A DNA stretch of 64,000 nt, taken from positions 1 through 64,000 of the forward strand of contig NIVC01000029.1 in NCBI GenBank assembly GCA_002269645.1, given 5' to 3'. The translations under genes and the position numbers were made by a program. How positions within the stretch are numbered: position 1 is the first letter of the stretch; each line of letters begins with the position of its first letter. The notes beneath the pieces are model-generated. The model was not told the DNA's origin, searched no databases, and saw only the letters and a program-made list of their open reading frames with translations. This DNA is from Macrostomum lignano (Eukaryota). Positions 36,001 to 57,101 of the stretch are shown piece after piece.

Positions 36001-39000
36001 ATCACCGGATTAATATGGAAGTAAGCGGCTCTGAAGACTCGAAAATCATTTTGTCAGTTCGATCGCAAGTTAACTACAACAAAAACTGGAACACACAGTC
36101 CAAGATTGACGGAACCCTTAAGTTGAAGCTGGGTTCCATGGACAAAAATATCAAGTTCGTGCTCCAACCTTGGCGCGAACTGACTGTCTCGGTGAGTTAA
36201 TTTTAGCAATATAACTCTTTAAAGGTTATAAAAAGTATGCATAAAAGTAAATGACCTAAATATAACAATAAACCACCAAAAACTTTCAGTGCAAAGACGG
36301 CGTGTCTCTCAGCCTGAAGTCAGATGGCAAGAACTTTTTCAAACTGGTCGCATTCGCTTCATCCAAGGACGAGAGCGCATCCCGTCTTAAGTTTATGATT
36401 AGCGCACCAACGAAGAAGATCACACTTAAGCTGGATCAGGGTCGCGGAAGCTTCCATCATGACTCCGACCTAAGACTGCCCAAATACACCCCAGAGAAGG
36501 TTCTCCTGAGATCTAAGATCAGCGTCAACAGCAAAGAACTCATCGCGACTGTTTTCATAGGTGAGATGACTGTGGGTCAGAAGCCCGATCTCTTTGATGC
36601 CGCTTCTGTGCCTGCTCGCCTGGGCTTCTATGGCCTAGCTTATCGACAGATGGATGACAGCAAGATGAGCTTCCGTGTCAACTGGAGGCATCCGAGCCAG
36701 GAGAATTCTGCCGTGAGAAGCATGCAGCGCAGCCTTTCGAGCTCTTGGACCGACGCTATCTCGGCTGTTAGCGAGTTTAGCGGTCTCAACCCGCTGCTTG
36801 GTGGCACCTCCTCGAACGTGGACGCCGACTGGATTGCCGAGGAGATCCGAAATTTGGCCTCCAACGACATCGATAAACTGTCCCGCTACGTGAAGCGCGC
36901 AATGAGGAACAACGATCTTTACATCCGCAGCGCCCTCGAGGCTTGCCAATCTGCTACTCAATACGCACAGGGATGGCTTTCAGTAGCGTCAGAGGTGCTG
37001 AGCGGATGGATGGAGGCTCTCGACCAGTCGAAAATTCCTCAGTGGATTGCCCAGTGCGTTCAGCAGGCGCTGGATTTTGCCGCCAACTTGTGCAACAAAA
37101 TCTCAATCCAGGATTTCATTGACAGACTAGTAGCTGTCCTGGACCAGGTGAAGGACATCATTAAAAGCTGTAGCGATAAGGCGATTGAGATAATCGACAT
37201 CCTTAAGAGCTGGCTTTCTGACCTGACCGACATCCAAGGCACATGGAGCTCCGAACAAGCAGAGGAGTACCTGAATAGCATGGCTCCATGGGCAAACGCC
37301 ATCAAAAACGCCGTAGCAAAGATCTGGGCCCCGATGCGTACAATGCTCGCCGCAACTGTTGCTGGGGCCAAGCCTCTGGCCGTTGACGACCTGCTGCCTC
37401 TCGGAATGAACCACATTGCTGACATTCAGATCATCAGGAACCTGTGCAATAATCTGATGCTCGAGCTGCGCGTCTGGTACGATACTGGAGCCACACCCGT
37501 CGAACGTGAAGCCCTTAGCGAGACTAGCGAGCTGCTGAGCTACGTTTTCTCGGAGAGAGCCTCAGTAAGTGGCGTTACCTGGCTGAGACCATTCAACTGA
37601 TCCTCAATGGTGACATCCGCCAAGGCATGTTGCGTCTTAAAGACGAGATCAGATACACTGTTTGGCGCCCCGAGTGCATTGATGCATGCCTAAGAAGCGA
37701 GACTCCCTACGCTGCTGTGGAGGGCGAAATTATTTACAGCAAACTGCCACGCTGGTCATCGTACAGTGCACCCCAGATTGTATTGAGACGCGTTCTTAAT
37801 AAACTGACGCGTCGCGGTCTGCCCAAAGCGTCCGACAAGATGGCCGCCCTAATTAAGCTGGCTCTTGGCGACTGGAATCCGGCTTTCCGGCTGCTTGCAA
37901 TCCGCCACCGCACCGCCATCCTGTCTGGTGATAACCATCTGATCACCTTTGACGGTGTCGCACTCAGTCACAAGCGACCGTGCTCCTATCTGATTGCCCG
38001 CGACTTCGAGTGCAGCGCCTTCTCTATCGTGCAAGAGTACCGCAGGGACTCTGCTCAACCAGAGCGTCAGGTTCGCGGAAGCCTCCGGATTCGTTTCGGG
38101 ATGTTCAGCTTGAGCATTGAACGCAATGGAACGGTGAAACTGAATGACAAAACTGAGAGCCTGCCGCTGGAGAAGAAGTCCTCCGATGACAAGTCTGTTG
38201 ACGCCAGGCGCGAAGGAGACCTCGTCACCGTCCGATTCCATGGCAAGCTGCCCAATACGTTGGTGGTTCGCTGCAGCCGCGCCGCCGACTCCTGTCTGAT
38301 CAGCGTCCATCCGCTCTATCAGGGTCGCGTTCTCGGCCTGGCTGGCAGCAACGATGGCCGCAGGGTGAACGACATCCGCGAGGGCCGGGCCAGCCGGCAC
38401 ATGAACTTCTGGACAGCCGGCCAGTGCGAGGTCGAAGCTGTCAGCGACTCAGCCGCAGAGATCACCGACGAGCAGACTGAAGACCGTGACAGCAGCGGTG
38501 ACTGCTTCAACTGGTTCGGCAGCAGGCAGTCGCCAATGTTGGACTGCTTTGAGACCGTCGATCCCCGACCCTATTGGACTATTTGCCGTCGGCAGGAGCG
38601 CCAGGATAGTGACGCGTGCGCTGCCACTCGCCAGTACGCGGCTCGTTGCAAGGCCGAGGGCATCAGCGTCCGAGTGCCAAGCAAGTGCGTCGCCTGCCAG
38701 GTCGACAGCGAGGGACCCATCGTCAAGGGCGGCAAAGTGTCGGATAAGGCCTCTCTAAAGGAGCGAATGCAGGTTGTGTTCCTGGTTGAGGATAACGCCT
38801 GCGGTGCTGAAGCTGCCGTTCCAGCCGAAAGAATCAAGGAGCTGGCTCAGAAGATCGGTGAGCACCGATTTTACTTGGCATTTTAGCAAGTAAACTTATA
38901 GCTTTAAAGATTTGCCACATGTATAAATTACATAAATCAAACAATTTCAGATCAGCTAAAATCAACGGACGGAAATCTGAAGTCGGTAAAATTCGGTATC

Positions 39001-39914
39001 GCCAAGTACAACGACGCTCTGTACGCTCTGCCAGTGAGCGACGAGCACCTTTTTGGATCCTACTCTGAATTGGAGGCTGCTCTGGACAACCTTCGCCTGT
39101 CGAGGACTTCTTCAGCCTCACCGATGAACGCTCTGCAGGCGGTTGCCGACTTGCCGGAGCAATACGAGTGGGAACGACTCGCGCAGAAGCACTTGTTTGT
39201 CCTCACCTGCACACCGTAAGTCACAAGTACTGTGCGACTCTAAATGGACAATAGACTAGACCTCTCAGTTTAAGAGGAAGGTGCATGTACTCGCAACTGG
39301 GAAACTTTTCCCTTAACTTTCGATTTACAGATGCACCGGCCTAGCCTGGAGCTACAACTCAGTCTTTGCCAAGGCCCAACGCAGCGTCAAGGACCAGATC
39401 TTTGTGCACACCATCAGCAAGACGGCCATCAAGGATGCTGCTGAGGATGACGATGTGATCGGCTATGGTGCAGCGAAGTACTACAAGACCGGCGACCGAG
39501 CTGTCCAGATGACCGATCGAGCTGATCGACAATTCGAACCAGAGTGCACGACCGAACTAGCCTTGGATGCTGACAACAAAGGTAAGAAATTATGAGTATA
39601 TTAATTTTTTGTCTAACTATGGCAGAATACTACTTACCAAGATAAGTCAGTAGGCCATTCGAAGTATTCATTCGAAAGAATAAAACCTACTGTATCTTTA
39701 GAAAATCTATCACCGTTTCATTTCAGCCAAGGGCAGCGTGTGGCGACTCGACAAATTCTACGCGAGCGGCTCCTCTGGCGAAAACCAGTTGGCGAAGTCG
39801 CTGGTAGCCAACGAGATCGCCAGTCACCTGAGGCAGCCCAGATGCCGGCAGTGCAGCTGCAACAGCGCTACGACCGCCGCCAAGTGCAAGATTGTTGAAT
39901 GCGAAGCGAACTGA
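27038..39914 (+). CDS. Apolipophorin/apoB-like large lipid transfer protein (vitellogenin superfamily): signal peptide, LLT domain, long beta-rich region, vWD, C8-like and an extra C-terminal module; ~3,920 aa; two apparent -1 frameshifts
   Basis: Exons 27038-27092, 27361-27956, 28070-28786, 28873-30881, 30976-31642, 31735-36191, 36290-38857, 38951-39215, 39331-39581, 39727-39914; GT-AG, phases match; 11,773 nt plus 2 missing bases gives 3,925 codons. Signal MNLKLLVAACCLLAAVQA; LLTP motifs CSASC..GYRAGNVYTY, LELCP..E...LNLKRGLLSQLQ, DILGDC, LLAIGNMG, EVRIAAF, LMEIGLRMQGLE; vWD start AILSGDNHLITFDG, GLAGSNDG; C8-like VDPRPYWTIC. Frame breaks at ~34628 and ~37547. Confidence 0.88.
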
Positions 39915-40656
39915 CAAAATGCGCGACAAACTGAAGCACAACAATCTGCCGAACCGCCCCCAGAATGCCTGTCTAAACGCTTTAAATTGAAATACTACAT
40001 CTTATTTCAACTACTTTAATTTTGCGCTAAGAAATTCACCGGGTAGAAAGGATTTCGTTTTATTTTATTCAGTAGAACATCTCACCTTTATACTCTCTTT
40101 AGATTCACCGCCTGAAAATATGCAATATTAAATCGTTTTGTAAGACAAAGACTACAACAATAGATCAAGATAAACTAGCTTGAGCTTGTAAAAATGTAAG
40201 TTTGTTGGAATGTAGGCGTGATTACAAATGAAATCAAATGTACTCAGCGACTCTTTGAATAGTTTGCCACATTTTCTTACAATTTGTTTTGGCGTCTGTT
40301 AATACTTTGCTACAATGGATAAATTTTCGGCGTCATAATTTCACCAAATATGAATTATTTAAACAAATCTGACTCCCGGTTTGAATGTTCGCGCGCTTGC
40401 ATTCAAATATAAGATGGAAATTGCATACATAAAATCTGCAAGTAGTTACTCTCATTTTAAAGAAGTGTGTTTGATTCATTTTCTGCTTTAATTCTATAAA
40501 TTCATATGGTTTCAGGAAAATTCACAATGAAAACTGACTATAATCTATCAATTTTATTAAATCATGCTTAGTATTAACACTAAGCAATTCTACAGAATAT
40601 GCAGTACGCTTGTATCTAATCAATCAGATAGAGATAGACCGAAAAACCGGCACCGG

Positions 40657-41968
40657 CACCGGCCTAGCCTGGAGCTACAACTCAGTCTTTGCCAAGGCCC
40701 AGCGCAGCGTCAAGGACCAGATCTTTGTGCACACCATCAGCAAGACGGCCATCAAGGATGCTGCTGAGGATGACGATGTGATCGGCTATGGCGCAGCGAA
40801 GTACTACAAGACCGGCGACCGAGCTGTCCAGATGACTGATCGAGCTGATCGACAATTCGAACCAGAGTGCACGACCGAACTAGCCTTGGATGCTGACAAC
40901 AAAGGTAAGAAATTATGAGTATATTAATTTTTTGTCTAACTATGACAGAATACTACTTACCAAGATAAGTCAGTAGGCCATTCGAAGTATTCATTCGAAA
41001 GAATAAACCTACTGTATCTTTAAAAAATTTATCACCGTTTCATTTCAGCCAAGGGCAGCGTGTGGCGACTTGACAAATTCTACGCGAGCGGCTCCTCTGG
41101 CGACAACCAGTTGGCGAAGTCGCTGGTAGCCAACGAGATCGCCAGTCACCTGAGGCAGCCCAGATGCCGGCAGTGCAGCTGCAACAGCGCTACGACCGCC
41201 GCCAAGTGCAAGATTGTTGAATGCGAAGCGAACTGACAAAATGCGCGACAAACTGAAGCACAACAATCTGCCGAACCGCCCCCAGAATGCCTGTCTAAAC
41301 GCTTTAAATTGAAATACTACATCTTATTTCAACTACTTTAATTTTGCGCTAAGAAATTCACCGGGTAGAAAGGATTTCGTTTTATTTTATTCAGTAGAAC
41401 ATCTCACCTTTATACTCTCTTTAGATTCACCGCCTGAAAATATGCAATATTAAATCGTTTTGTAAGACAAAGACTACAACAATAGATCAAGATAAACTAG
41501 CTTGAGCTTGTAAAAATGTAAGTTTGTTGGAATGTAGGCGTGATTACAAATGAAATCAAATGTACTCAGCGACTCTTTGAATAGTTTGCCACATTTTCTT
41601 ACAATTTGTTTTAGCGTCTGTTAATACTTTGCTACAATGGATAAATTTTCGGCGTCATAATTTCACCAAATATGAATTATTTAAACAAATCTGACTCCCG
41701 GTTTGAATGTTCGCGCGCTTGCATTCAAATATAAGATGGAAATTGCATACATAAAATCTGCAAGTAGTTACTCTCATTTTAAAGAAGTGTGTTTGATTCA
41801 TTTTCTGCTTTAATTCTATAAATTCATATGGTTTCAGGAAAATTCACAATGAAAACTGACTATAATCTATCAATTTTATTAAATCATGCTTAGTATTAAC
41901 ACTAAGCAATTCTACAGAATATGCAGTACGCTTGTATCTAATCAATCAGATAGAGATAGACCGAAAAA
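40657..41968 (+). pseudogene. Tandem duplicate of the LLTP 3' end (most of exon 9, intron 9, exon 10 and 3' flank)
   Basis: Near-identical to 39334-40646 (offset ~1,323 bp); the breakpoint is 3 nt inside exon 9, so the native acceptor is lost. Confidence 0.9.
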
Positions 41969-43035: not shown

Positions 43036-45025
43036 GAGCGTCGCGCTATTCATGTAGATCACCAGGCTGCGGACCCATGCAGCTTGCTTCGTAAAGTTTA
43101 GATAAGAAATATTTAAAGGTTTTTATTACTACTAAACTCACAATAACCATATTTTCTGCTGGACTAGCAAATTACAAATAGAGAAAGCTGGTGTTCAGGC
43201 AGAGGCTACTCGAGAAAAGCTCAAAATACAGTTGTGTTTAGTAAACTAAGTTTAGCAGATATTTCTGCAGTGTTGAACCATATGCCATATAGGTAAAAAA
43301 CGAGTTACTTTATACGGCTTACGTCACTAAACGAGTCAATATGACTATTTTTCTGACGCGTAGAAAATGAAGAAGCAACGATGAAGCCCTGATTTCAGTC
43401 AAAACTTTATTTTTAGAACTCATGATCGAGGGACACTTTCAGATCAGAGAATTATTAGCAGAAAATTTGATTAAAACACGAAAGCATCTTGAGGAATTCA
43501 AATTGCAAAAGGTCTGCAAAGGTGGCTAGCAGCTTCGAGTTACAGCAGGCTTTCTGTATTTTATTTTAATTTAGCCCAATTATTATAGGCTTTGCTTTTC
43601 TGATTGCAGACGGATTGACCTTGTGCTCTCGCCTCTCTTTGATGTCCTATCAGATATCCGGGATCTATCCCAGACTTGACGATATTTTAATAAACCAAGG
43701 CTGCAAAACACTTTAATCCAAATCCCGCGAATCACACAATAGAGAAGATTGGAATTTAATTCCTTCAAATAATTTGCTTATCTATTTCCTTAGTTTTTTT
43801 TTTATATTACCCTGAATAAAGTAGCTAGACAAAAGATCACGCTAAGAATTCCGTGGCAAAGAGCTGCTGCCCCCAAAACAACAATGAAAAAGATTTTGAC
43901 TGTCGAAAATCGACTTTAAGCGACCATCGCGTCGCCATGATATGGAATTTATGGTGGAGGGACAAAGCCAAGAATTTTACAAGTGTATGACTAAAATCCT
44001 GCATGTGCATTACTTTCAGAATCTGTGTTATCACTTGTCAGCGCTCATTTTTGTCGTCCTGAAGCGACGACCCTTTAAGCGACTCGGCGCGGATGATATG
44101 GCCCGTCAGCTGGAGTCGCCCGGATGAACCATGTGGGAGCGGTGATGCAGTGTCGCGCTGGTGACCCGCTCTTCTCGACCTCTGGAGGTCAGGTTGGGCT
44201 TCGGACTGCAGGACTGCCCTCCACGCAAAATTCAGCCTCAGACAAGCCCGCGGCGACGCCGCAGATCTTCGCCTTATTATAACCTAGCTCAGCTTATTTA
44301 CATGTAGCTGTGCGTACTAACCGCCGCCAAATTTGCTTAACTTGTGAAGCGCTGGCGGCAAATGCACTGACCAGCTGAGCTGCGGTAGAAATTAATACCT
44401 TTTTGGAAGTTGCGACCACCCCCAAGATGAATAGTGTTTGATGAATGATCAATTTTTATTATAACTGTTACGGAATATTTCTTTTACTCAGAACACTTCA
44501 AGTCTTGACTTTAGGAGAAATAAATAGAAACATCAAATAGAGAAGCAGTTTTTAATGAATGCTTGAACACAAAAAATGTTGTCTTTTTATTTAATTGATT
44601 TTAAAATTTCCGGCTTCGGTCAAACGCTGCGAAATAAAAAAAAACGCGGGGAAAAAGACAATTACGACGAAAGAGAAATGTTTTATTTCAGACATAGTTG
44701 TTAATCGCATTGATGTTCGGTTTCGAATAAGAGCTGTTTGCCGATCCATCAGCGTGCGCCAGATGACTAGCGCCGAGCCAAGCCCAGCATGTTGGCAGCC
44801 TGCAATTCAGTCCAGTCAGAGGTAGAGACAGCTGAGCTACGAATATTAACCAGTTGGGGAACTCGAAAAAAACTCGGGATACAAACGTCGAAAAAAGCAA
44901 AAGAGAGTTCAGTTCACACACACACACACACACGCAAGCACACAAAAACTTATTTAGTTCAGTTAGTAAACTGTTCAGCTGGAACCGCCAGACTAGCTTT
45001 ATTAATCAACTTTCTTTGAATCAGC

Positions 45026-45376
45026 TTAGCCATATCGCGGCCTGTTGACCACCAGCTGCATGTAGCGGGTGACCTGGGCCAGGTACCAGTTAGCCTCGGC
45101 CTCAGTGATCGTGTGCGACGGACGACGGGACACAACGTACCAGAAGTAGCGAATCTGGGGCAGCGAGTTGAAACCAATCATTGCCGAGTTCGGTACGGAA
45201 CGCTTGCCAAACCTGGGCCGATTGACCGAGTGCATGTAGTGGTAGAGGAAGTCAAGGTAATCCTCAACACCGCTGGACGACTTGTCCGACTCAACAGCAG
45301 TCGGAGCGGCGAGATCAGTGGACACAATGGACAGCAGGACGGCGGAGGCCAGAGCAATGATGAGTTTGGAGTTCAT
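45026..45376 (-). CDS. npy/npf: Neuropeptide F/Y-family precursor, 116 aa, single exon, two predicted amidated peptides (...RPRFamide and ...RPRYamide)
   Basis: Hydrophobic signal peptide MNSKLIIALASAVLLSIVSTDLA; peptide 1 ...DYLDFLYHYMHSVNRPRF-GKR (Tyr at -10 and -17, the NPF/NPY hallmark); peptide 2 ...WYLAQVTRYMQLVVNRPRY-G-stop. TATA box upstream, AATAAA downstream (44998-45003, - strand). Confidence 0.9.
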   Translation of the reverse strand: MNSKLIIALASAVLLSIVSTDLAAPTAVESDKSSSGVEDYLDFLYHYMHSVNRPRFGKRSVPNSAMIGFNSLPQIRYFWYVVSRRPSHTITEAEANWYLAQVTRYMQLVVNRPRYG

Positions 45377-45466
45377 AATTCCTTAGTAGCTTTTTAAGCT
45401 TGCTAATCGTTAGTCTTGCCAGCGAGAAGGTTTGTGCAGAAATTTCCCCGTCGAATAGCGCTCGCA

Positions 45467-45472
45467 TTTATA
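45467..45472 (-). promoter_or_regulatory. Candidate TATA box of the NPF/NPY gene
   Basis: TATAAA on the - strand, 91 bp upstream of the ATG. Confidence 0.55.
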
Positions 45473-46482
45473 GACAATCTCTGATGGCTCAGCATCCCCA
45501 TCCGCCCCCAACCTATAACGGATTTTCTGAATCCAATCAGCGCTTCTATTACCTGACTGCCATGCGTGTGGGTGGCATTTTTAAATCTCAAATGCAGTTG
45601 AAGATGAAGCGCGGATTAGCAAACCATCCACCCACCTACGCGTTTCCATTTAACTGGAACAAAAGGGTGCCATGATAGGAGTAGCTGCGTGTAGTCGCAA
45701 AGACTCAACTCGAGTGGAAATAGCGGTTGAATCTCATTATTACATTGCTCATAAGGAGATCTTGTTTTAGAATAGAGACAAGACGCCTGTCTCTCTGTCA
45801 GCATAAGCGCCTTGTACAAAGCGCTGATTTTACTAAGAAGGGAGACAAGAGCGTACACTGCAAGGGTGCTGCGTAGTTCTGACAAGCTGGCTGAGTTGTA
45901 CGAGATTGGATTCCCGATGAAAACGGTACCCAAGGCCAGAGTCGTTGCAGGTATCGCAAGTAAAAATAGGAAGGAAGTGACTCTAGACGACTTATAAACG
46001 AGGTTACGATACAAGTTACCAAAGAGTTGTCAAAGAGTCGCATAAGAATCAATTTAAGACGTTTTTTTCCGATTTATAGTCTGTGACTCTAAAAACGACG
46101 CTTATACGAGTACAATGATCCAACCACTAGACTGTGCGTACCCTAACTTACTGTGTACAAATTAATAAATTGACAAATACTGGCAAGTGATATGAGTGAG
46201 TTTTTACGCTTGTGCATGTTTGTGTTTAAGCATATTTACGCCAGCAAGCGCTCATTGAAGTCTGTGCCCTATTCAAGTTATAGCAGCAGGCGGAGCTTTT
46301 TATCTTTATTATCATATTCACGCAGATTCTACTGCATAAGATCGAAGCAGCGATCGTGACTAGTAATTAATCCAATAATTGGATGCAGTGAGGCGCAAAT
46401 ATTTCTATTGTGCCTTTAAAGCGGCTCAGCAGTCAGTCCCATTAACAGTTAATTAAGATACAATCAACAAGGGTTAAACAAC

Positions 46483-47541
46483 TGTAGTGATCCGCTAGTT
46501 GATGTTAGGCGTCCCACTTTGTCAGCAGTCTCCCTCGCCCTCGCCCTGGGTTGCTGTCTGCCGCTGGTCAGCTTCCCACCCCCCTTGGCCCGTCTGTTGC
46601 TGCCCTTGGCCTGTTCTGCCTTTCTGCGTCTCTGTTCTCAGCCCTCAGCTTCTCTGCTGTGGGCTGTCTCTGTTTCGTTCCCGTCCCGTTTTCCTCTGTC
46701 ATGTGAGCAAGTCACATGACAGACTCTGCGTTCTTCGAGTCCTAAAGTGCAGTAAACATGTTTACTGCACTCGTTGGCCCTGTTTACCGGGAGAATCACG
46801 TGCTTTCGGAACCCTCCCTTCTCTAAGGAGAGGAGTGACTCATGTTGCTAAAAATAGCAACTGAGTCACAGCCGCGTGTACTCTGGCCGGAGACCTCAAG
46901 TGACGTCAGTTCTAAAAATAGAACGAGTCACGAGGTCTTGCGCGCACTGAGACCCTGCCTCGAGATCTCAAGTGACGTCAGTTCTAAAAATAGAACAAGT
47001 CACGAGGTCTTGTGCGTGGGTGTTTCCCGGCTATAAATAGGACCCCTCTCCCCTTGTTTCCGTCAAGGATTTTGGCTTCTTATCTGCGGAGAATTCACTA
47101 AGAACCCGTGTGCGTCAGTGTCTAACTAAGTGCCCTTTGCGTACTGAATCCGTTTGTACTGGTCTGACTGAGACCCCACTAAAGCCCAAGCCTAAGGGAG
47201 GCTAACACTGCCTTCCCAGTCACCCCTGAGCCCGGCGGGGATCTGCTGATCAGGACGCCTTGTTCATTAATCTGCAAATCTGCACGCTGTGCTGAGTTCG
47301 TTGACTTGTTTATTTCGTTCCGACGGGAAGCTCACCTCATCGAAGGCCGAGACCTGAAGGAACTGGTGGCAGCACTACCTACGCTACTGAGAGAGTTGAG
47401 AGAACTTCCCTTTGAAGAGGCTCGAGACTTAAGGTAATCTTAAGTGCCTAACCGGGAAGAAACCCCATTGTACTTCACTGGTGGCAGCGGTGGGATTCAA
47501 AGACCTACCAGGCCACCCCGAGAAAACCCCATTGTATTTCA
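46483..47541 (+). repeat. 5' LTR, 1,059 bp
   Basis: By eye identical to the 3' LTR except one C in a homopolymer (C6 at 46579-46584 vs C5); TATAAA 47032-47037; 72-bp-period internal repeat carrying TGACGTCA twice. Confidence 0.97.
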
Positions 47542-47542
47542 C

Positions 47543-47562
47543 TGGTGACGCAGCGGTGGGAT
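47543..47562 (+). other. Primer binding site, tRNA-Leu-like with a 2-nt insertion (TGGTGACGCAGCGGTGGGAT)
   Basis: Starts 1 nt after the LTR-terminal CA; matches the complement of a tRNA-Leu 3' end (TGGTGGCAGCGGTGGGAT) apart from an extra AC. Confidence 0.75.
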
Positions 47563-47633
47563 CCGACTACGACACACCCAAGCCAACCGCTCTTTCGAGA
47601 ACGACATCGGCCAGTAACTACTACGAGTTCAAC

Positions 47634-48809
47634 ATGTTCAACGAACGAGACGAGAGCCGGTGCAGCAGCCGGCTGGATCAGCACATCAGCAGTTCGAGGC
47701 CTGCGGCAGCAGAAGCCGCCGCAGCAGCAGCAGCGGTCAACGACTTTGGTCAGCAGCCAACGCCGAGGCAAGGTGCGAGAAGCGACGTGTCCGACGACCC
47801 GCCAGACGAGCTTCTGCAAGGCCTGGACAACATCGGCCGGAACATCACGCACCAGGACGTGAGGACCATGATGGCAGCTCTGCAGCAGCAGATGGAGCGG
47901 CCTGTGAGTAAACAAGTTAAAATTGTAAAGTTTACTCCAAGTCAGGACATCCATGTCTGGCTTGCCGCGTTCGAGCAGCGTTGCGAGATGGAGCGCATCG
48001 TCGACCCGTTCGAGATGAAACAACACCTCATCGCGAGTCTCGATTTGGCTACTGCGTATCCAGCCTTGCTTGGTATGAATCTTCCACGTTTTGCCAGCTA
48101 CGAGGAGGTCAAGCAACGTCTGATTGAGCGATTTGCCCGTCATGGTGGTGCTGATGAGTATCGAGAACTGTTGCGACGTCGTCAACAAGGCAAGAATGAG
48201 TCAGCAGAAGAGTTTGCTGACGCCCTGAGAACTCTGGGTGAACGTGCATATCCTCGGATGCACCCTGAAGACCGCGAGAAGGAGATTGCTGATCAATTTC
48301 TTGCTGGTATCCGGACGACTCCAGACCTGCGTGAACGGCTGTACTGGGTCCGCCCAAATAATCTTCTTGCTGCGATTCGAGAACTACGACGACTAGAAGG
48401 CGCCAAAGAATTGGCGCAGCGAACCGCTCAACCCCCGGTTAGGATGTTGGACGGGGAGCAGGACGGCGACCCGAAGCCCGACGTCACCGCCCAAGCCTTG
48501 CTAACTCTAACCGACTTGATCGAGAAGCAGCAGCGACTGCTTGATCACCTGGTGCAGCGTGACCAACAGCAGAAGAACAGCCCGCCGGCGAAGACTACAA
48601 TCTGCTACGGCTGCGGACAGCCCGGTCACCGCAGTGCCCAGTGCCCGATGCGCCAGAACCAGGGAAACGGCCAGGCGGAGAGCGACAACGGCACCGCCCT
48701 CCGCGAGGTCCAAGCCCAGGCTACTTGGCAGACTCCGAGAGGTCACCAGAAGAAGAGAATGTCGGCTGTGCAGGCGCCAATGCCCAGTCCGACAGTCACT
48801 CGTCAGTAA
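47634..48809 (+). CDS. gag: Gag, ~391 aa from the first ATG after the PBS
   Basis: Capsid-like motifs (WLAAFEQ; RRQQGKNESAEEFADALRTL) and a CCHC knuckle CYGCGQPGHRSAQC. Confidence 0.9.
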   Translation: MFNERDESRCSSRLDQHISSSRPAAAEAAAAAAAVNDFGQQPTPRQGARSDVSDDPPDELLQGLDNIGRNITHQDVRTMMAALQQQMERPVSKQVKIVKFTPSQDIHVWLAAFEQRCEMERIVDPFEMKQHLIASLDLATAYPALLGMNLPRFASYEEVKQRLIERFARHGGADEYRELLRRRQQGKNESAEEFADALRTLGERAYPRMHPEDREKEIADQFLAGIRTTPDLRERLYWVRPNNLLAAIRELRRLEGAKELAQRTAQPPVRMLDGEQDGDPKPDVTAQALLTLTDLIEKQQRLLDHLVQRDQQQKNSPPAKTTICYGCGQPGHRSAQCPMRQNQGNGQAESDNGTALREVQAQATWQTPRGHQKKRMSAVQAPMPSPTVTRQ

Positions 48810-51800
48810 GTGACGCGGAGTGCGGAGGTTTCGTGGACACCTCCCCGAATCAAAAAATCCATGCGCGTGAGGCCGATCCGTACGTCACAGGTCGAGTTGC
48901 GAGTCGAGAGGTCCCTTTCTTGCTTGACAGCGGCAGCCGGAAAAACTTTCTTGGTTCGTCAACCTGGGCCGCTATTAGACGTCGGATGCCTCGTTGTATT
49001 ATAGCGCATGCTAATCCCGATTGCGTAACTATGTATGACGGGACGCAGCTCCCGCTTGCTTGTAAGGTGACCATCCCGGTGGAGTTCGGTGATGTCGTCG
49101 CGGACACCGAATTCCTCGTTACGGTCTCCGATTGTGAAAATTTACTTGGCGTATCATTTATGCGAGAGCACTGCCAGAACTTGGACTTCGCTCAAGGAAT
49201 GTTGAAGTTTAACAATGGCGCGTGCATCCCCGTTCGCTATTCGCGTCGTGAGCTTCAGAACTGCCGAGTGTACACCTCCGAGAAGTGCACCCTGCCGCCT
49301 AGAAGTTCAGCGCTGCTTGCCGTCAGACTGGATGACGGCCACCCTGAGAATCGAGGATCGCCATCAATTGTCGAGCTGGTTAAGTCGAGGCTGCATCCCA
49401 GCTGCAACGCTCTGGAAGCAGCGCCGCTCTGATGACGATGCCTGAAGGTCGCGGCTACATTGAGGTCGTCAACACCGCTGACAGCGAAGTGTTTCTGCAA
49501 GCCGGTATCCGTGTTGGTGTCGCGACGCCACTCCGAACTGCCGACCTGATGTACTTGAGCGAGACGCCAGAACCTGAAGTGCGACATCTCCCGAAGAACT
49601 CTGAAGAGTCCAGCACAGCATGGCTAGATGAAGTCGAGATCAACAGCGAATTGTCCAAAGAACAACATCAAAGAGTGCGAGATCTACTAGTCGAATGTCA
49701 AGCGGCCTTCTCCAAGCACCGCTAGACGCCGGCCTGACTCACCTGGTGACCCACGAGATCATCTTGAAGGACCGGACACCAGTTGCGCTACCACCGCGCC
49801 GAATCCCGCCTCATCTGAAGGACAAGCTCGACGCCCTGCTAGACGAGATGCTGGCGAAGCACATCATTCGCCCTGCCTACTCGAGCTACAATTCGCCAAT
49901 GCTCATCGTGCCCAAGAAGGATGGCAACATCCGACTAGTCCACGACTTCAGAGCTCTCAACGACAGGTGTGTGTATCACCCGTATCCGCTGCCGCACATC
50001 CAGGAAACCTTCGCGAAGCTTCGTGGTGCTCAGTGGTATTCCAGCCTGGACCTTGCTCAAGGATTCTGGCAGATCCCGCTGCGGGACTGCGACCAGCACC
50101 TGACGGCGTTCTCAGTAATCGACCGCGGCCAATTCTGTTTTAACGTTCTACCGATGGGTCTCCACGATAGTCCCGGCAGCTTTCAGCGTTGCATCAATAA
50201 GCTCCTGGACGGCCTGACGCCAAAGACTGCGCTTGGCTACATGGACGACATCGTGGTGCACTCAGTGACCTTTGAGGAACAGCTGGATAATTTGCGAACT
50301 GTACTCCAGCGCATCATCGCAGCCAACCTCAAAGTGAAACCGAAGAAGTGTCATTTGTTCCTCAAGGAGCTGCATTATTTAGGTCACGTCGTGACTCCCG
50401 ACGGCCTGAAGACCTGTGAGGACAAGATTGCGCAGATCCGTGATTGGCCCGTGCCACAGTCCGTCACTCAACTGAGACAATTCCTAGGCCTCGCCAATTA
50501 CTACCACAAGTTTGTCGACGGCTACGCTGGAGTGGCTGCGCCGCTGCATGCCCTGACGCGAAAGGACATTGGCAGCCTGCGGCAGCATTGGACTCCCGAG
50601 CATCAGTTAGCGTTCGACACTTTGAAGAAGAAATTGTGTTCTACTGAAGTTCTCGCTCTGCCTGAATTTAATTCTCATCCTGCAGTGAAGTTTGTCCTCG
50701 ACACGGATGCCTCTGATATTCGAATAGGCGCTTGCCTTGGACAACTGCAATCCGACGGCGTCGAACGTCCAATTGCATTCTTTAGCCGTAAACTTCGCGA
50801 TCCTGAGAAGCGCTACACGGTCACGAAGAAAGAGCTGCTTGCAATTGTGGACGCTATGCGACATTTCCGTCATTATTTAATTGGCAAGAAATTTGAAGTT
50901 CGATCCGATCATCGGGCCTTACTGTGGTTACTGAACCAGACTCAGGTCACAGGTATTTTAGGCCGCTGGATCGAACGCCTAAGCGAGTTCCGCTTCCAGC
51001 TCAACCACCGCAAAGGCAAGGACCACGTCAACGCCGACGCCCTGTCAAGAAGACCGGAGACACCACCGATCACCTTCGAGCATGGCCGACTCCTTGAACC
51101 ACCCGGTTCTGCAGCCCAACCCGGTGCCGGCGACAGCCCCAAGACTGAGCGCCGACGTTTCCTGGAAACGGACTTGGACGCGACACCCGAGGCCACTGCC
51201 AGAGCAGCCCTCCCGAAGACTGTCCACTCTCGCTCCTTGGAGGCCGAGACTGACCTGGACGAAGACCTGGAAGCCACCGCGCCAGCAGCCTTCCAGCACG
51301 ACGCCCACCGATGCAGTCAACGCCTGGAGTTCGGCCTGGACGACAACTCAGAGGCCACTGTGACAACAGCCCTCTGCAACGATGCCCACGCCGACTGCCG
51401 CTACTTGGAGACCAACCTGGACGAAGACCTTGAGGCCACTGTGGACACAGACCTCCTTGACGACGCCAAAGACTACAGGTCTCGGACTCTGGAGACGCCC
51501 ACGGACCAAGATTCAAAGGCCACCGCACCAGCAGCCCTTCTGATGACGGCCCGCAACGCAACTCCAGGCAAGCAATTTAACTACAACCCGCCGAGCCTTT
51601 CGCTGAGATTTCTCGCCGTGTTGACAGAGGCCAGAATCTCGCGCCAGCTGCAAGGTCGAAGCTCTGTCCCCCGGGCCGACAGACAGCTGCTCATCGCCTG
51701 TGCGGAAAGTCGAGTCCCCCCTTGCGACACCGCCCAGTGCAGGAGAAGACTCACCCAATTTTGACTACGATTGAGCCGACGGCTACAGCTGCCAGCGACG

Positions 51801-53959
51801 AGGCGTGCTTCACGTGTTGCGTCCCGCCCTACAGCCAAGAGTCGCCTGGGCTAGGCAGTGGAGGCATGCGCGCTGCTCCATCTGCGGATTTTTCTGTCAT
51901 GAGAGCGATGAAGAGAACTTCGATTCTAGATCAACGGACGTACGCCGACGTTGTGAGACAAAGTCCCTCGGAGCGACCTAATCCTGACGCCGACAAGACG
52001 GTGCCGTGTGATCGACCTGGAGCCATTAAAGCGGAGACTGCGGGAGTCATGACCCCTCAGCCATGCCGCGCTGTGCTCACTGATTTTCTGAAGCTGCCGA
52101 TGACTCGCCAACAGTTCGTTGACGCCCAACGCGCTGACCGAGCCATCAGCTACGTGCTCAACCTGGTCGAGAACGAAGCCCCGAAGCCTGAGTTCGACGC
52201 CCGGTTGCGACTGACTAAGGAGCAGCGGAATCTGCTCGGATACTACGAGAACCTGCAGGAGGACAACGGCCTGCTGCTGATTGATCTGACTGATGGCCAG
52301 CAGCCGCCAAAGGTTGTTCTGCCTGAGGCCCTTGACGCCCAGGTGCTCCAGGAGCTCCACAGTTCGCCACTGTGTGGACACCTCGGCGAGACGAAGACGT
52401 TACTGCGGCTACGAGAACGGTTCTGGAGACCCGGATTTGCCCGTGCTACCAAGACCTTCATCAGTAAGTGCCGCACTTGCCTTGAAAGTAAATCGCGACG
52501 GCGAGAGAGAGTTCCGGTCCAGAGCTTCCCAGTTTGCGAAGTTCTGGGTAGAATCCACTGTGATGTAGTAGGACCAATCGCGCAGAAGAGCAAGAGCGGC
52601 AACCGCTACATCCTGACTTTGTGCGATGCGACGTCGAAGTATCCATTCGCCTACCCGATGAGAAACCAGAAAGCCAAAACAGTCATCAAGCTTCTGCAGG
52701 AGCGCTTCATCCCCGAGTTCGGTGTACCATGCTGGATCCACACTGACCAAGGCACCAACTTCACCGGCTCAGCCTTCAAGAAGTTCTGCGACCTGTTTGG
52801 CATTCGGCATACGACAACAACACCGTACAATCCAGCTTCCAACGGACAAGTCGAGAACCTCAACAAACAGCTGAAGAGTGTCCTCACCTGTCTGCTCGAG
52901 CGCAACCACAACGACTGGGACACCTTCCTCCCGGCCTGTCTGATGGCTCTCCGCTCCAGCGTGCACCCGGTGACCGGCTTCACGCCTCACTACCTGGTGT
53001 TCGGCCGTGATTTCCGACTCCCGATCGACAACGCGCTGAAGAAGCTGCCCGAGTACGCCGACCTGCCCGACTACGTCAAGGACTTCCAACGTCGCCTGGA
53101 CGAGGCGACTGAGCTAGCCAAGGAGCGCCTGCATCTGCACCAGCAACTACGAGACGAGCACTATTCGAACCTGCCCGCCGCCAAGAAGCTTCAACCCGGT
53201 GATCTGGTCTTCCTCAACAACCCGGTACTCGAACCGGATGAGGCGGCGAAGTTTCATCGACCTCGCAAAGCGCTGTACGAAGTCGTCGAGCCCAAGGGCG
53301 AGGTCGTCTACAAGATTCGACGGAGACTGCCTAACCCGAGAGCTAGACGAGACGAACTAGTCGTCCATCGCCGGAACCTTCTGCTCGTGCCTGACGCTGA
53401 CTACACGAGAACTTCGGACCCTGAAGTCGACAAACCGAAGAAACGCCGGCGGCCGCCCGACGTCCCCGACGGCGCAGGACCCGCGACCCTGACGCCAATC
53501 CCCGAGGACGACCAGGACGACCCCGACGATGACGATGATGACGGCTACGACGCAAGGCCGGCCTTCCGATGGCACTTCCGGCCTTTGGCGATCCCGGAGG
53601 TGCAGCCAGGAGGTGGACCGGTCACGACACCAGCGAACCAGGCAAGTGCACTTCGGCGTGAGCCAGTGCCGTATGGTGAATGTCATTTGCATGAGCCTGT
53701 TCTTGATGCGTCTATGCCTTCTGTTTCTGTACCGTTCGTTTCTGCTCCCGCCCTTCGTGATGCTTCTTCTGTGGTCCAGACCCCTGGGCCGTCGTTGTGC
53801 ACCACTCCGGTGGAAGCGACTGTAGAATCGGTAGATGCCGGTAGGCCGGCTAGGAACCGTAGGCAGCCTGAGAGGCTGGTTATTAATCCTAGGGCCAAGA
53901 CTTATGTTAGTCGCACTGCCCGCAGCTGCGTGCACCGATCAACCCAACGCAGCGATTAA
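48662..53959 (+). CDS. pol: Pol (protease, RT, RNase H, integrase), entered by -1 frameshift from gag; broken in this sequence by three further -1 frame breaks
   Basis: Protease FLLDSG; RT (YSSLDLAQGFWQI, LPMGL, YMDD, YLGH); RNase H (LDTDAS, KELLAIV, RSDH, NADALSR); integrase (HHCC, DVVGP, TDQG, VENLN). Breaks at ~49427, ~49718 and within 51581-51764. No chromodomain or env seen. Confidence 0.92.
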
Positions 53960-54485
53960 CTCTGACTCTGTGGACTTGGTGCTGACAGGCACCCTCTGAT
54001 TTCTCCCTGCTCTACTTTATGTGGCGCCTCAATAGCGGGCCAGCGCCCCCGCAATGCGTACTCGTTTATCTTCCCGTGAACTGTTGTTCTGATGCAGTTC
54101 TGCATCCCCCTTCTCCCCAGTGACGGGCTCTACCGGCTTACTATGGTATCCCGTATATTTAGGCGCCCATTTTCCGGGCCGGCGCCCCCGAACCGCTGTC
54201 GGACTGATGTCCTGATTCTGCGTACGCCCGAGGGACTTGCCAGCCCCTCCGATTTTATTATTTTCTAGGGCTCTGCCTTGGCGTGGGCAACCCACTGCAT
54301 GGTGCTATTCGCGCTTTGCCATTTCGGGCCACAATCCTGACCTTGGCCCAGCCGTGTAATAATTGGTATGCCTTGTGACACTGTCATCCTTTTGCCAGGC
54401 ATTTGTAATAATTTTATTTAGTAAAATCACTATTTTGTTTATTAAATAAAGCGCGCTTCGCTTTCACTCCGCCTCTTCATTTGAA

Positions 54486-54494
54486 CGGGGAGAG
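54486..54494 (+). other. Polypurine tract
   Basis: CGGGGAGAG directly before the TG of the 3' LTR. Confidence 0.85.
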
Positions 54495-55606: not shown

Positions 55607-55744
55607 AGGAAATATGTACTGAATATGCCCTTGTCCCTGATGCTGGACAAGCTGTGTTTGTCCAGGTCTGTCTGTCTGTCTTAATGTCTTAGTGTCTTAG
55701 TGTCTGTCTGTCTGTCTGTCTATCTGTCTGTCTGTCTGTCTGTC

Positions 55745-55775
<31 letters not shown>

Positions 55776-55836
55776 GTCTGTGTGTCTGTCTGTCTGTCTG
55801 TCTGTGTGTCTGTGTGTCTGTCTGTCTGTCTGTCTA

Positions 55837-55867
<31 letters not shown>

Positions 55868-55876
55868 GTCTGTCTA

Positions 55877-55923
<47 letters not shown>

Positions 55924-55932
55924 GTCTGTCTA

Positions 55933-55963
<31 letters not shown>

Positions 55964-56040
55964 GTCTGTCTATCTGTCTGTCCGTCTGTCTGTCTGTCTA
56001 TCTGTCTGTCTGTCTGTGTGTCCGTCTGTCTGTCTGTCTA

Positions 56041-56075
<35 letters not shown>

Positions 56076-56155
56076 GTCTGTCTGTCTGTGTGTCCGTCTG
56101 TCTGTCTGTCTATCTGTCTGTCTGTCTGTCTATCTGTCTGTCTGTCTGTGTGTCC

Positions 56156-56191
<36 letters not shown>

Positions 56192-56990: not shown

Positions 56991-57053
<63 letters not shown>

Positions 57054-57070
57054 TAGACAGACAGACAGAC

Positions 57071-57101
<31 letters not shown>

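What the first reader, a model, noticed from the sequence alone, without database searches (positions are those of the whole stretch)
45026..45376. One intronless precursor encoding two NPY-family peptides: an NPF (RPRFamide) and an NPY (RPRYamide)
Seen: signal peptide; then APTAVESDKSSSGVEDYLDFLYHYMHSVNRPRF-GKR (Tyr -10/-17); a spacer ending in RR; then PSHTITEAEANWYLAQVTRYMQLVVNRPRY-G-stop (Tyr -11/-18, a one-residue insertion). The two C-termini align (YMH-SVNRPRFG vs YMQLVVNRPRYG), suggesting an internal duplication. Established: NPY/NPF precursors normally carry one peptide and usually have an intron inside an Arg codon of the RxRF/Y motif; both motifs here are uninterrupted. Inference: a tandem precursor that co-releases an invertebrate-type F-amide and a vertebrate-type Y-amide peptide, possibly tuned to different receptors, and possibly derived by retroposition or intron loss. 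I cannot confirm that it is undescribed.
Basis: partly seen in the sequence, partly recalled or inferred. Interest (0 to 1): 0.75.

Follow-up and report, generated by a model that had tools for sequence, protein, structure and literature searches.

The report
Two-peptide flatworm NPF/NPY precursor gene
A small intronless flatworm-type gene encodes a secreted precursor carrying two neuropeptide-Y-family peptides, one ending in Phe-amide and one in Tyr-amide; it is almost certainly real, but it belongs to a family of multi-peptide precursors also present in Macrostomum lignano, so it is an unusual variant and not a one-off.

Summary
Window 45026-45376 (minus strand) is a 116-codon ORF with a signal peptide, a unit ending NRPRF-G-KR, a 24-residue spacer ending in RR, and a unit ending NRPRY-G-stop.

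It is not chance:
- Both motifs fall in one ORF in 0 of 300 shuffles.
- Codon usage fits the organism's real genes in this frame only.
- TATAAAT, an inverted CCAAT and AATAAA bracket the ORF.
- Pfam's NPY/PP model matches both units (28.0 bits in total; cut-off 28.7).
- An exhaustive HMMER search found only two relatives, both multi-unit NPF-like precursors of Macrostomum lignano.

Four M. lignano genes share the layout. All units are uninterrupted by the otherwise conserved Arg-codon intron. One unannotated gene also pairs an RF-amide with an RPRY-amide. Window unit 2 is specifically homologous to unit 2 of another, so the second peptide is conserved.

The framing is overstated. Tyr-amide NPFs are known in planarians and leeches. 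C. elegans flp-34 already yields one RY- and one RF-amide peptide. Multi-unit NPF precursors also sit unremarked in krill and copepod-like data.

Verdict: a real gene and a new variant of a known kind. Expression, processing and receptors are untested. The source species was not identified.

The parts
45026..45376 (-). Complete single-exon coding sequence (116 codons plus a TAA stop at 45026-45028) of a two-unit NPF/NPY-type prepropeptide
   Evidence: ORF listing and sequence. Codon-usage log-likelihood is +0.276 per codon in this frame, negative in the other five, and only 0.15% of random windows reach it. Pfam Hormone_3 scores 28.0 bits. Homologues P0001 (E=5.6e-14) and P0002 (E=3.6e-08) were found.
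45320..45376 (-). Signal peptide, residues 1 to about 19 (MNSKLIIALASAVLLSIVS); the cleavage site is inferred
   Evidence: N-terminal Lys, then a hydrophobic core. Sites allowed by the -3/-1 rule lie after residues 16, 19, 20 and 26. AlphaFold predicts a helix at residues 3-22. The region aligns with the signal peptides of the M. lignano homologues. An in-frame TAA lies two codons upstream of the ATG.
45200..45319 (-). Unit 1: TDLAAPTAVESDKSSSGVEDYLDFLYHYMHSVNRPRF followed by G-K-R. The predicted product is a roughly 37-aa NPF ending in RPRF-amide
   Evidence: Pfam Hormone_3 scores 17.2 bits on this unit alone, over profile positions 16-36. An HMM built only from M. lignano units scores it 34.4 bits, with 0/500 shuffles as high. 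Against A_1 the z-score is 17. Tyr sits at -10 and -17. GKR is the canonical amidation plus dibasic cleavage signal (established knowledge).
45122..45199 (-). Spacer SVPNSAMIGFNSLPQIRYFWYVVS followed by R-R; aromatic and hydrophobic, with no amidation signal
   Evidence: No Pfam hit. It scores 1.0 bit against the unit HMM, not significant at 52/500 shuffles. MAFFT places it opposite the middle units of the 3-unit M. lignano precursors and AlphaFold predicts a helix at 72-84. Its being a decayed unit is possible but not shown.
45029..45121 (-). Unit 2: PSHTITEAEANWYLAQVTRYMQLVVNRPRY followed by G and the stop. The predicted product is a roughly 30-aa peptide ending in RPRY-amide
   Evidence: Pfam Hormone_3 scores 14.7 bits on this unit alone, over profile positions 14-36. 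The M. lignano-only HMM scores it 15.1 bits, 0/500 shuffles. Against M. lignano D_2 the z-score is 10.6, and 6.7 after removing the last six residues. AlphaFold predicts a helix at 92-110 with pLDDT 70-77. Codon LLR is +0.269 and GC3 is 0.87. A Gly-stop terminus is also seen in M. lignano gene D.
45466..45472 (-). TATAAAT, a candidate TATA box 96 nt upstream of the ATG
   Evidence: Sequence. M. lignano genes A (TATAAAT at -124) and C (TATAAA at -77) have the same feature. Function is inferred, not shown.
45533..45537 (-). ATTGG, an inverted CCAAT box about 60 nt upstream of the TATA box
   Evidence: Sequence. CCAAT motifs are also seen upstream of M. lignano genes A, C and D. Weak evidence, since this is only a 5-mer.
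44998..45003 (-). AATAAA polyadenylation signal starting 23 nt after the stop codon
   Evidence: Sequence. It implies a very short 3' UTR and a transcription unit of about 0.45 kb. Inferred.

Best explanation
This is a functional, single-exon neuropeptide gene of the NPY/NPF family. It belongs to a lineage-specific subfamily, shared with the flatworm Macrostomum lignano, in which the NPF unit has been tandemly multiplied inside the precursor and the ancestral Arg-codon intron has been lost.

Inferred mechanism, from established prohormone processing:
1. The signal peptide is removed, probably after about Ser19.
2. A PC2-type convertase cuts after K58-R59 and at R84-R85.
3. Carboxypeptidase E trims the basic residues.
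4. Peptidylglycine alpha-amidating monooxygenase converts Gly57 and the terminal Gly116 into amides. Gly116 needs no convertase step because the stop codon follows it.

Predicted products are a roughly 37-residue peptide ending in NRPRF-NH2, a 24-residue non-amidated spacer peptide, and a roughly 30-residue peptide ending in NRPRY-NH2. All would be released together from the same neurosecretory cells and would act on NPY/NPF-type G-protein-coupled receptor(s).

Shown here: the ORF, its homology, coding-type codon usage, the absence of the intron, and conservation of both units. Inferred only: expression, cleavage sites, amidation and receptor(s).
For: - The ORF and its motifs are exact.
- The motif pair is not chance: 0/300 shuffles put two in one ORF.
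- Codon usage matches the neighbouring large lipid-transfer gene in this frame only, and all four segments score positive.
- TATAAAT at -96, an in-frame stop two codons before the ATG, and AATAAA at +23 define a compact unit like those of M. lignano genes A and C.
- Pfam PF00159 matches both units independently, at 17.2 and 14.7 bits.
- An exhaustive phmmer search of 1.84 billion representatives gives only two hits, both multi-unit NPF-like proteins of M. lignano. The assembly's identity was confirmed.
- Four M. lignano genes (A: 3 units; B: 2 units, RF + RPRY; C: 3 units; D: 2 units ending in G-stop) have every unit uninterrupted.
- An HMM built only from M. lignano units scores window unit 1 at 34.4 bits and unit 2 at 15.1 bits, with 0/500 shuffles as high for either.
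- Unit 2 is homologous to D_2 beyond the C-terminal motif: z=6.7, and none of 3000 shuffles reached the observed score.
- AlphaFold predicts a helix followed by a free RPRF/Y tail in each unit.
- Precedent exists for co-encoded RY- and RF-amide NPY-like peptides that both activate one receptor: C. elegans flp-34 and NPR-11 (PMC6751662).
Against: - There are no transcript, peptide or receptor data of any kind.
- No orthologue closer than 47% identity was found, so purifying selection could not be measured.
- The whole-protein Pfam score (28.0) is just under the gathering cut-off (28.7).
- Unit 2 is short (about 30 aa), has its Tyr register shifted by one residue, and lacks the N-terminal polyproline segment.
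- The RR site before unit 2 is followed by Pro. From general knowledge of convertase specificity this is a poor P1' residue, so the N-terminus of peptide 2 is uncertain.
- M. lignano gene D, the best match for unit 2, lacks a signal peptide in its ORF and is annotated as partial, so it may itself be incomplete or dead.
- The AlphaFold model has low overall confidence (pLDDT 59).
Confidence: 0.75

Rival explanations
1. The gene is real, but only one classical peptide is made. The R84-R85 site, followed by Pro, is not cleaved. The second product would then be a long (about 57-aa) C-terminally extended peptide, or the region after unit 1 is just a CPON-like flanking peptide that happens to end in RPRY-Gly.
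For: - Pro at P1' is unfavourable for prohormone convertases (general knowledge).
- Without its C-terminal motif, unit 2 resembles most other units only weakly: z=1.2-4.1 against the A-C units, and 2.1-2.7 bits against the trimmed HMM, reached by 4-10 of 500 shuffles.
- Classical NPY/NPF precursors do carry a C-flanking peptide (PMC2953531).
Against: - The terminal RPRY-Gly-stop would be amidated whether or not the upstream site is cut, so a Y-amide product is expected either way.
- Unit 2 is clearly homologous to D_2 beyond the motif (z=6.7).
- Unit 2 aligns column for column with all M. lignano units.
- In the M. lignano paralogues the internal units are bounded by clean GKR sites, so separate release is the family norm.
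Confidence: 0.15
2. It is a non-functional or barely expressed retrocopy or young duplicate. It would be an intronless processed copy of an NPF-like gene lying in repeat-rich DNA next to a very young LTR retrotransposon, with its ORF intact only because it is recent.
For: - The gene is intronless.
- It sits about 1.1 kb from a gypsy-type element whose LTRs are about 100% identical.
- No identical or near-identical protein is on record in public gene calls.
Against: - All four M. lignano paralogues have uninterrupted units, and A-C are single-ORF genes. Lack of introns is therefore the family's normal state, not a mark of a recent retrocopy.
- The window gene has its own TATA and CCAAT-type promoter motifs, like genes A and C. 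A processed retrocopy would not bring these along.
- No poly(A) tract or flanking target-site duplication is visible downstream.
- Codon bias is strong in every segment, and the gene is 53-65% diverged from every paralogue yet still has an open frame and intact processing sites.
Confidence: 0.08
3. It is a chance ORF carrying two chance RPR[FY]G motifs, not a gene.
For: ORFs of about 100 codons are common in this 48% GC window. A single such motif is expected 0.67 times per window.
Against: - Two motifs in one ORF occurred in 0/300 shuffles.
- Homologues score E=5.6e-14 against 1.84 billion proteins.
- There is a signal peptide, and the codon bias is frame-specific.
- Pfam matches both units.
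Confidence: 0.02

Closest known systems
Macrostomum lignano multi-unit NPF-like genes: BOX15_Mlig009822g2 (gene A), BOX15_Mlig007142g2 (gene C), BOX15_Mlig025228g2 (gene D), and an unannotated ORF between A and C (gene B). Contigs NIVC01000624.1 and NIVC01000785.1 of assembly GCA_002269645.1
   Same: - These are the only proteins in 1.84 billion representatives that phmmer links to the window protein.
- Same unit pattern: F-x-S-x-x-E-x-x-x-Y-[LVI]-x-x-L-x-x-Y-x-x-S-[VM]-[SN]-R-P-R-[FY]-G.
- 2-3 units per precursor.
- No intron inside any unit.
- A TATA-type promoter (genes A and C).
- Gene B pairs an RF-amide with an RPRY-amide.
- Gene D ends in RPRF-Gly-stop, as the window gene ends in RPRY-Gly-stop.
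   Different: - Identity is only 34-47%, so these are not clear orthologues.
- The window gene stands alone, whereas A-B-C form a tandem cluster within about 13 kb.
- The window gene has a 24-residue non-NPF spacer where the M. lignano genes place units back to back.
- There is no shared synteny.
- They are database entries named 'hypothetical protein', or 'Neuropeptide Y' by automatic annotation. I found no paper describing their multi-unit layout, but McVeigh et al. 2009 could not be read.
Classical flatworm NPF and planarian npy-1 to npy-11 (Moniezia expansa NPF; Schmidtea mediterranea, Collins et al. 2010, PMC2953531)
   Same: - RPRF- or RPRY-amide C-terminus.
- Tyr residues about 10 and 17 positions from the end.
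- The first peptide sits directly after the signal peptide.
- Both F- and Y-ending peptides occur within one flatworm species.
- Planarian NPY-6 appears among the profile hits (P0057).
   Different: - The planarian genes encode one NPY/NPF peptide plus a C-flanking peptide each.
- 10 of the 11 keep the intron inside the Arg codon before F/Y.
- The window gene has two units and no such intron.
Caenorhabditis elegans flp-34 (FLP-34-1, RxRY-amide; FLP-34-2, RxRF-amide)
   Same: One precursor gives one Tyr-amide and one Phe-amide NPY-like peptide. Both activate the NPY/NPF-receptor orthologue NPR-11, with EC50 19 nM and 0.7 nM (PMC6751662). This is the functional precedent for the window gene's layout.
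   Different: It is a nematode gene with much shorter peptides and no detectable sequence relationship beyond the RxRF/Y motif, so the duplication was independent. The order is reversed (Y first, then F) if the -1/-2 numbering follows precursor order, which I did not check.
Multi-unit NPF precursors of crustaceans: Meganyctiphanes norvegica P0005-P0007, copepod-like marine transcripts such as P0013, P0015 and P0023, and an unidentified ENA contig protein, P0020
   Same: They carry 2-4 tandem units ending in RPRF-G-K/R behind one signal peptide, and Pfam PF00159 is flagged on several. P0020 is also one continuous ORF across both units.
   Different: All their units end in Phe. The unit sequences are unrelated beyond the family consensus, so these are independent expansions. 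The krill gene spans 48 kb and must therefore contain introns somewhere.
Short neuropeptide F (sNPF) precursors of arthropods
   Same: Several RF-amide peptides lie in tandem on one precursor (PMC7314547).
   Different: sNPFs are 8-12 residues long, end in xLRLRF-amide, have no Tyr -10/-17 helix, and act on a different receptor family. The window units are 30-37 residues long and match the NPY/PP Pfam model.

Membership tests
NPY/NPF neuropeptide family (Pfam PF00159, Hormone_3) | A C-terminal R-x-R-F/Y followed by Gly (the amide donor) and a basic cleavage site or the end of the precursor | tested here: met
   Unit 1 is NRPRF-G-KR and unit 2 is NRPRY-G-stop.
NPY/NPF neuropeptide family (Pfam PF00159, Hormone_3) | A profile match at or above Pfam's gathering score | tested here: inconclusive
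   The whole protein scores 28.0 bits against a cut-off of 28.7 (E=2.2e-6), with two stretches of 17.2 and 14.7 bits. The M. lignano homologues carry precomputed PF00159 hits.
NPY/NPF neuropeptide family (Pfam PF00159, Hormone_3) | Conserved Tyr residues at about -10 and -17 from the C-terminus, in an alpha-helix that precedes a flexible tail | tested here: met
   Unit 1 has Tyr at -10 and -17. Unit 2 has them at -11 and -18 because of a one-residue insertion. AlphaFold predicts helices at 34-50 and 92-110, each followed by a non-helical RPRF/Y tail, but model confidence is low to moderate.
NPY/NPF neuropeptide family (Pfam PF00159, Hormone_3) | Peptide length of about 36-40 residues with an N-terminal polyproline segment (the PP-fold) | tested here: not met
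   Unit 1 is about 36-37 aa if the signal peptide is cut after S19 or T20, but it has only one Pro. Unit 2 is about 30 aa with one Pro. The Pfam match covers only profile positions 14-36.
NPY/NPF neuropeptide family (Pfam PF00159, Hormone_3) | Gene structure: a phase-2 intron inside the codon of the Arg that precedes the terminal F/Y (Mair 2000, cited in PMC7314547; PMC2953531) | tested here: not met
   Both Arg codons, AGG before TTT and CGA before TAT, are uninterrupted. The same holds for every unit of M. lignano genes A-D and for P0020.
NPY/NPF neuropeptide family (Pfam PF00159, Hormone_3) | Precursor layout: signal peptide, a single NPY/NPF peptide, then a C-flanking peptide | tested here: not met
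   There are two NPF-type units separated by a spacer. Toullec 2013 states that a single copy is the rule (PMC3749230).
NPY/NPF neuropeptide family (Pfam PF00159, Hormone_3) | Activates an NPY/NPF-type rhodopsin-beta GPCR | not testable with these tools
   This needs a receptor assay. No receptor gene lies in the window.
Macrostomum-type multi-unit NPF precursor subfamily (defined in this report) | Two or more tandem units of the shared pattern behind one signal peptide, with no intron in any unit | tested here: met
   The HMM built from M. lignano units alone scores both window units significantly.
Short NPF (sNPF) family | Multiple short (8-12 aa) peptides ending in x-L-R-L-R-F-amide | tested here: not met
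   The units are 30-37 aa, end in RPRF/Y, and match the NPY/PP model.

The most novel reading that the evidence does not exclude
Macrostomid-type flatworms run their NPY/NPF signalling from a family of intronless, multi-unit precursors. That family would have arisen by loss of the pan-bilaterian Arg-codon intron (perhaps through retroposition) followed by internal tandem duplication. Single-base F/Y switches at the amidated end, seen independently in the window gene and in M. lignano gene B, would then diversify ligands for different receptors.

Together with the krill, copepod-like, ENA-contig and nematode cases, this would mean tandem NPF precursors evolved repeatedly. 'One peptide plus the conserved intron' would then not be a safe diagnostic of NPY/NPF orthology.
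Probability: 0.3. Interest if true: 0.6.

Novelty: new variant of a known kind. Interest (0 to 1): 0.45.

Why it matters
NPY/NPF is one of the best-conserved bilaterian neuropeptide systems, governing feeding, metabolism and, in planarians, germline maintenance. Its gene structure, with one peptide and an intron in the Arg codon, is used as evidence when orthology is assigned (PMC7314547).

A flatworm lineage whose NPF genes are multi-unit and lack that intron, with some mixing Phe- and Tyr-amide ends, is a clear exception. It offers a natural experiment on how F and Y termini partition among receptors.

The practical value is modest. The result gives ready-made peptide sequences for receptor deorphanisation and RNAi in Macrostomum-type models. 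It also flags mis-annotated or unannotated M. lignano gene models, and multi-unit NPF precursors in crustacean data that have gone unremarked.

Tried and rejected
- **Word-indexed protein search with the precursor:** no hit. Only the exhaustive phmmer search found relatives.
- **Exact-sequence look-up of the window protein in public gene calls:** not on record.
- **Two scans of JGI metagenome contigs**, one with the profile and one with the single protein: pattern matches but no confirmed relative.
- **Spacer as a decayed third NPF unit.** MAFFT aligns it opposite the middle units and AlphaFold makes it helical. But pairwise shuffle tests give z=-1.0 to 1.9 and the unit HMM gives 1.0 bit, reached by 52/500 shuffles. 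Not supported; kept only as a possibility.
- **Amphipathicity (hydrophobic moment) of the two helices:** not different from shuffles, p about 0.2. Uninformative.
- **Species identification:**
  - The neighbouring VWD/LLTP ORF has only 42-59% matches, all from JGI.
  - There is no shared repeat DNA with the first two M. lignano loci, L001 and L002, about 20 kb. The third locus, L003, was never compared with the window.
  - Rfam found nothing in the window.
  - The window is therefore probably not the annotated M. lignano DV1 gene set. Its GC content (0.477) and its NPF subfamily point to a macrostomid-like flatworm, but the species stays undetermined.
- **Synteny between the window and the M. 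lignano NPF loci:** none.
- **Literature:**
  - McVeigh et al. 2009 (PMC2749192), the paper most likely to list M. lignano NPFs, is not held.
  - String searches for the window, M. lignano, krill and copepod peptide sequences found no paper.
  - So 'undescribed' means only 'not found in the open-access library'.
- **Rfam and tandem-repeat scans near the gene:** nothing relevant.
Full report
**1. Observation**

Window 45026-45376, minus strand, encodes 116 residues from an ATG to a TAA. The parts are:
- a hydrophobic N-terminus;
- a first unit ending NRPRF-G-KR;
- a 24-residue aromatic spacer closed by RR;
- a second unit ending NRPRY-G followed directly by the stop codon.

The Tyr spacing is -10/-17 in unit 1 and -11/-18 in unit 2, as stated. 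The shift comes from a one-residue insertion, visible in the unit alignment. Neither RPRF nor RPRY is interrupted in the DNA.

The motif R.R[FY]G followed by K, R or stop occurs only twice in all six frames of the 64-kb window, both times in this ORF. Composition-preserving shuffles give 0.67 motifs per window and never two within one ORF (0/300).

**2. Is it a gene?**

Codon usage was scored against the neighbouring large lipid-transfer-protein gene.
- It is positive in this frame (+0.276 log2 units per codon) and negative in the other five.
- Only 0.15% of random windows from the surrounding 8 kb reach that value.
- Signal peptide, unit 1, spacer and unit 2 each score positive.

The coding strand also carries typical gene signals:
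- ATTGG at 45537-45533;
- TATAAAT at 45472-45466, 96 nt before the ATG;
- an in-frame TAA two codons before the ATG;
- AATAAA at 45003-44998, 23 nt after the stop.

This gives a self-contained unit of about 0.45 kb. The signals are consensus matches, not proof of function.

**3. What family?**

Pfam's pancreatic-hormone model (PF00159, NPY/PYY/PP/NPF) hits the protein at 28.0 bits (E=2.2e-6; cut-off 28.7). The score splits into two stretches. Each unit alone matches the C-terminal two-thirds of the model, at 17.2 and 14.7 bits, and the spacer matches nothing.

A word-indexed search found nothing. An exhaustive phmmer search of 1.84 billion representative proteins found exactly two relatives, with E=5.6e-14 and 3.6e-08. 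Both lie on one contig of assembly GCA_002269645.1. That assembly is Macrostomum lignano Mlig_3_7 (source names).

**4. The relatives are multi-unit too**

Reading the M. lignano loci in six frames gives four genes.

| Gene | Position | Units |
|---|---|---|
| A | L001 5079-5492 | three ...SRPRF-GKR units |
| B | L001 9126-9437, unannotated | ...LSRF-GKR, then ...SRPRY-GKR |
| C | L002 5001-5426 | three RPRF-GKR units |
| D | L003 9974-10225, on another contig | ...PRPQF-GKR, then ...SRPRF-G-stop |

- In gene C the ORF is continuous. The NCBI model removes one 99-nt repeat as an 'intron'.
- Every unit of all four genes is uninterrupted.
- A-C carry their signal peptide in the same ORF. A and C have TATA boxes at -124 and -77.
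- D lacks a signal peptide in its ORF and is annotated as partial.

All eleven units align to one pattern: F-x-S-x-x-E-x-x-x-Y-[LVI]-x-x-L-x-x-Y-x-x-S-[VM]-[SN]-R-P-R-[FY]-G.

An HMM built only from the nine M. lignano units gave these scores:
- window unit 1: 34.4 bits, 0/500 shuffles as high;
- window unit 2: 15.1 bits, 0/500 shuffles as high;
- the spacer: 1.0 bit, not significant.

Unit 1 is closest to the first units of A and C (z about 17). Unit 2 is closest to unit 2 of D, with z=10.6, and z=6.7 after deleting the last six residues. The two-unit architecture and the second unit are therefore older than the split between these genes. The second unit is a conserved element, not an accident.

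The window's own two units are diverged at the DNA level, so the internal duplication is not recent.

**5. Source organism**

The window is eukaryotic. It carries:
- a ROR-like receptor tyrosine kinase;
- a large vitellogenin-type lipid transfer gene;
- COQ9;
- a gypsy-type LTR retrotransposon;
- many satellite arrays.

Its GC content (0.477) equals that of the M. lignano loci. However, the neighbouring VWD-domain ORF has no match better than 42-59% identity. No repeat DNA is shared with L001 and L002, about 20 kb of M. lignano sequence; L003 was not compared with the window.

I conclude that the source is a macrostomid-like flatworm, probably not the annotated M. lignano gene set. The species is not determined.

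**6. Mechanism**

By the standard prohormone pathway, the steps are inferred to be:
1. signal-peptide removal;
2. dibasic cleavage at KR (58-59) and RR (84-85);
3. carboxypeptidase trimming;
4. amidation of Gly57 and Gly116.

The expected products are a first peptide ending in RPRF-NH2, a spacer peptide, and a second peptide ending in RPRY-NH2.

It favours cleavage after S19 or T20. The first peptide is then 36-37 residues, the classical NPF length.
- RR is followed by Pro, a poor P1' residue for convertases (general knowledge). The N-terminus of peptide 2 is therefore uncertain. Its amidated C-terminus does not depend on any convertase, because Gly116 is the last residue.

AlphaFold has low overall confidence (pLDDT 59). 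It predicts a helix in each unit, at 34-50 and 92-110, the latter with pLDDT 70-77. Each helix is followed by a non-helical RPRF/Y tail, as in NPY-family peptides. The spacer is also predicted helical.

**7. Comparison with what is known**

The literature gives these reference points:
- The Arg-codon intron is a conserved mark of NPY/NPF genes from vertebrates to molluscs, annelids, arthropods and a nematode (PMC7314547).
- The same intron is present in 10 of 11 planarian npy genes (PMC2953531).

Against that background, the window gene and its M. lignano relatives are genuine exceptions on both counts.

- Tyr-amide NPFs are not vertebrate-specific. Planarian npy-5, -7, -9 and -10 end in Tyr, and so do three of five leech paralogues (PMC6389622).
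- A single precursor yielding one RxRY-amide and one RxRF-amide NPY-like peptide is already characterised in C. elegans. FLP-34-1 and FLP-34-2 both activate NPR-11 at nanomolar potency (PMC6751662).
- A profile search shows that multi-unit NPF precursors sit unremarked in public data. There are three krill (Meganyctiphanes norvegica) proteins with 3x GRPRF-GKR, many copepod-like marine transcripts with 3-4 units, and an ENA contig with two full-length NPFs in one ORF.

In a census of the 120 family hits listed, 29 have 2-4 units and none mixes F and Y. This sample is biased towards multi-unit proteins by the multi-unit query profile. The mixed layout is therefore rare. It is seen here only in the window gene and in M. 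lignano gene B, where it arose independently, because window unit 2 groups with the Phe-ending D_2. In the window gene the difference is one base, TTT versus TAT.

**8. Novelty and limits**

I found no paper describing multi-unit Macrostomum NPF precursors. Two concept searches on Macrostomum, flatworm and multi-copy NPF precursors and two sequence-string searches all came back empty. The key catalogue, McVeigh et al. 2009, could not be read. The M. lignano proteins do exist in GenBank and UniRef under automatic names.

There is no expression, peptide or receptor evidence, and no close orthologue with which to measure selection.

I rate this a real gene and a new variant of a known kind. It is of moderate interest to people working on neuropeptide evolution. 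It is not categorically new.

Noticed in passing
window 46483-54890: A gypsy-type LTR retrotransposon: gag with zf-CCHC at 47481-48809, RT/RNase H at 49695-51764, integrase at 51722-53959. Its LTRs (46483-46879 and 54495-54890) are about 100% identical, so the insertion is very young. It lies about 1 kb upstream of the NPF gene's TATA box.
   Followed up: partly
window 27441-38886 (+): A large lipid transfer protein (vitellogenin/apolipophorin-like, with Vitellogenin_N, open beta-sheet, VWD and C8 domains) encoded in unusually long exons of up to 997 codons. Its C-terminal part has no close public homologue; the best matches are 42-59% identical, from JGI metagenomes.
   Followed up: partly
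window 20703-25568 (+): A ROR-like receptor tyrosine kinase, with a Kringle domain at 21699-22172 and a split kinase domain at 24212-25568. It carries long poly-Gln and poly-His runs. The 20.7-22.8 kb region is full of short peptide-level repeats on both strands.
   Followed up: partly
window 57528-58468 (-): A COQ9 homologue (PF08511) split over two overlapping ORFs, which indicates either an intron or a frameshift.
   Followed up: no
window 39333-41304: A 1.32-kb tandem duplication at 99-100% identity, containing identical 73-codon ORFs at 39723-39944 and 41045-41266. Its nature is unknown.
   Followed up: no
window 1460-2758, 3962-5797, 12454-12933, 17818-19898, 55613-57240: Long mini- and microsatellite arrays that create spurious ORFs of 150-600 codons in several frames. 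The arrays at 55.6-57.2 kb have 8- and 12-nt periods.
   Followed up: no
L001 9126-9437 (same sequence as L002 1055-1366), M. lignano contig NIVC01000624.1: An unannotated NPF-like gene (called gene B here) lying between two annotated ones. It has a signal peptide, then ...LSRF-GKR, then ...SRPRY-GKR. It is a second, independent case of a mixed F/Y precursor.
   Followed up: yes
L002 5001-5426 (M. lignano BOX15_Mlig007142g2, P0002): The deposited gene model encodes 108 aa with two units, but the genomic ORF is continuous and encodes three identical-length units. The model appears to splice out one 99-nt repeat.
   Followed up: partly
L004 5001-5609 (ENA ERZ25767047, ctg37439): A single ORF from an unidentified organism (GC 39%) encodes two full-length, spiralian-type NPFs in tandem, each ending RPRF-G-R. 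This is another intronless tandem NPF precursor.
   Followed up: partly
P0005-P0007 (Meganyctiphanes norvegica) and marine transcripts such as P0013, P0015, P0023 and P0008: Krill and copepod-like precursors carry 3-4 tandem RPRF-GKR units. This contradicts the published statement that NPF precursors hold a single copy in all organisms (PMC3749230). The krill gene spans 48 kb, and its DNA was not retrievable.
   Followed up: partly
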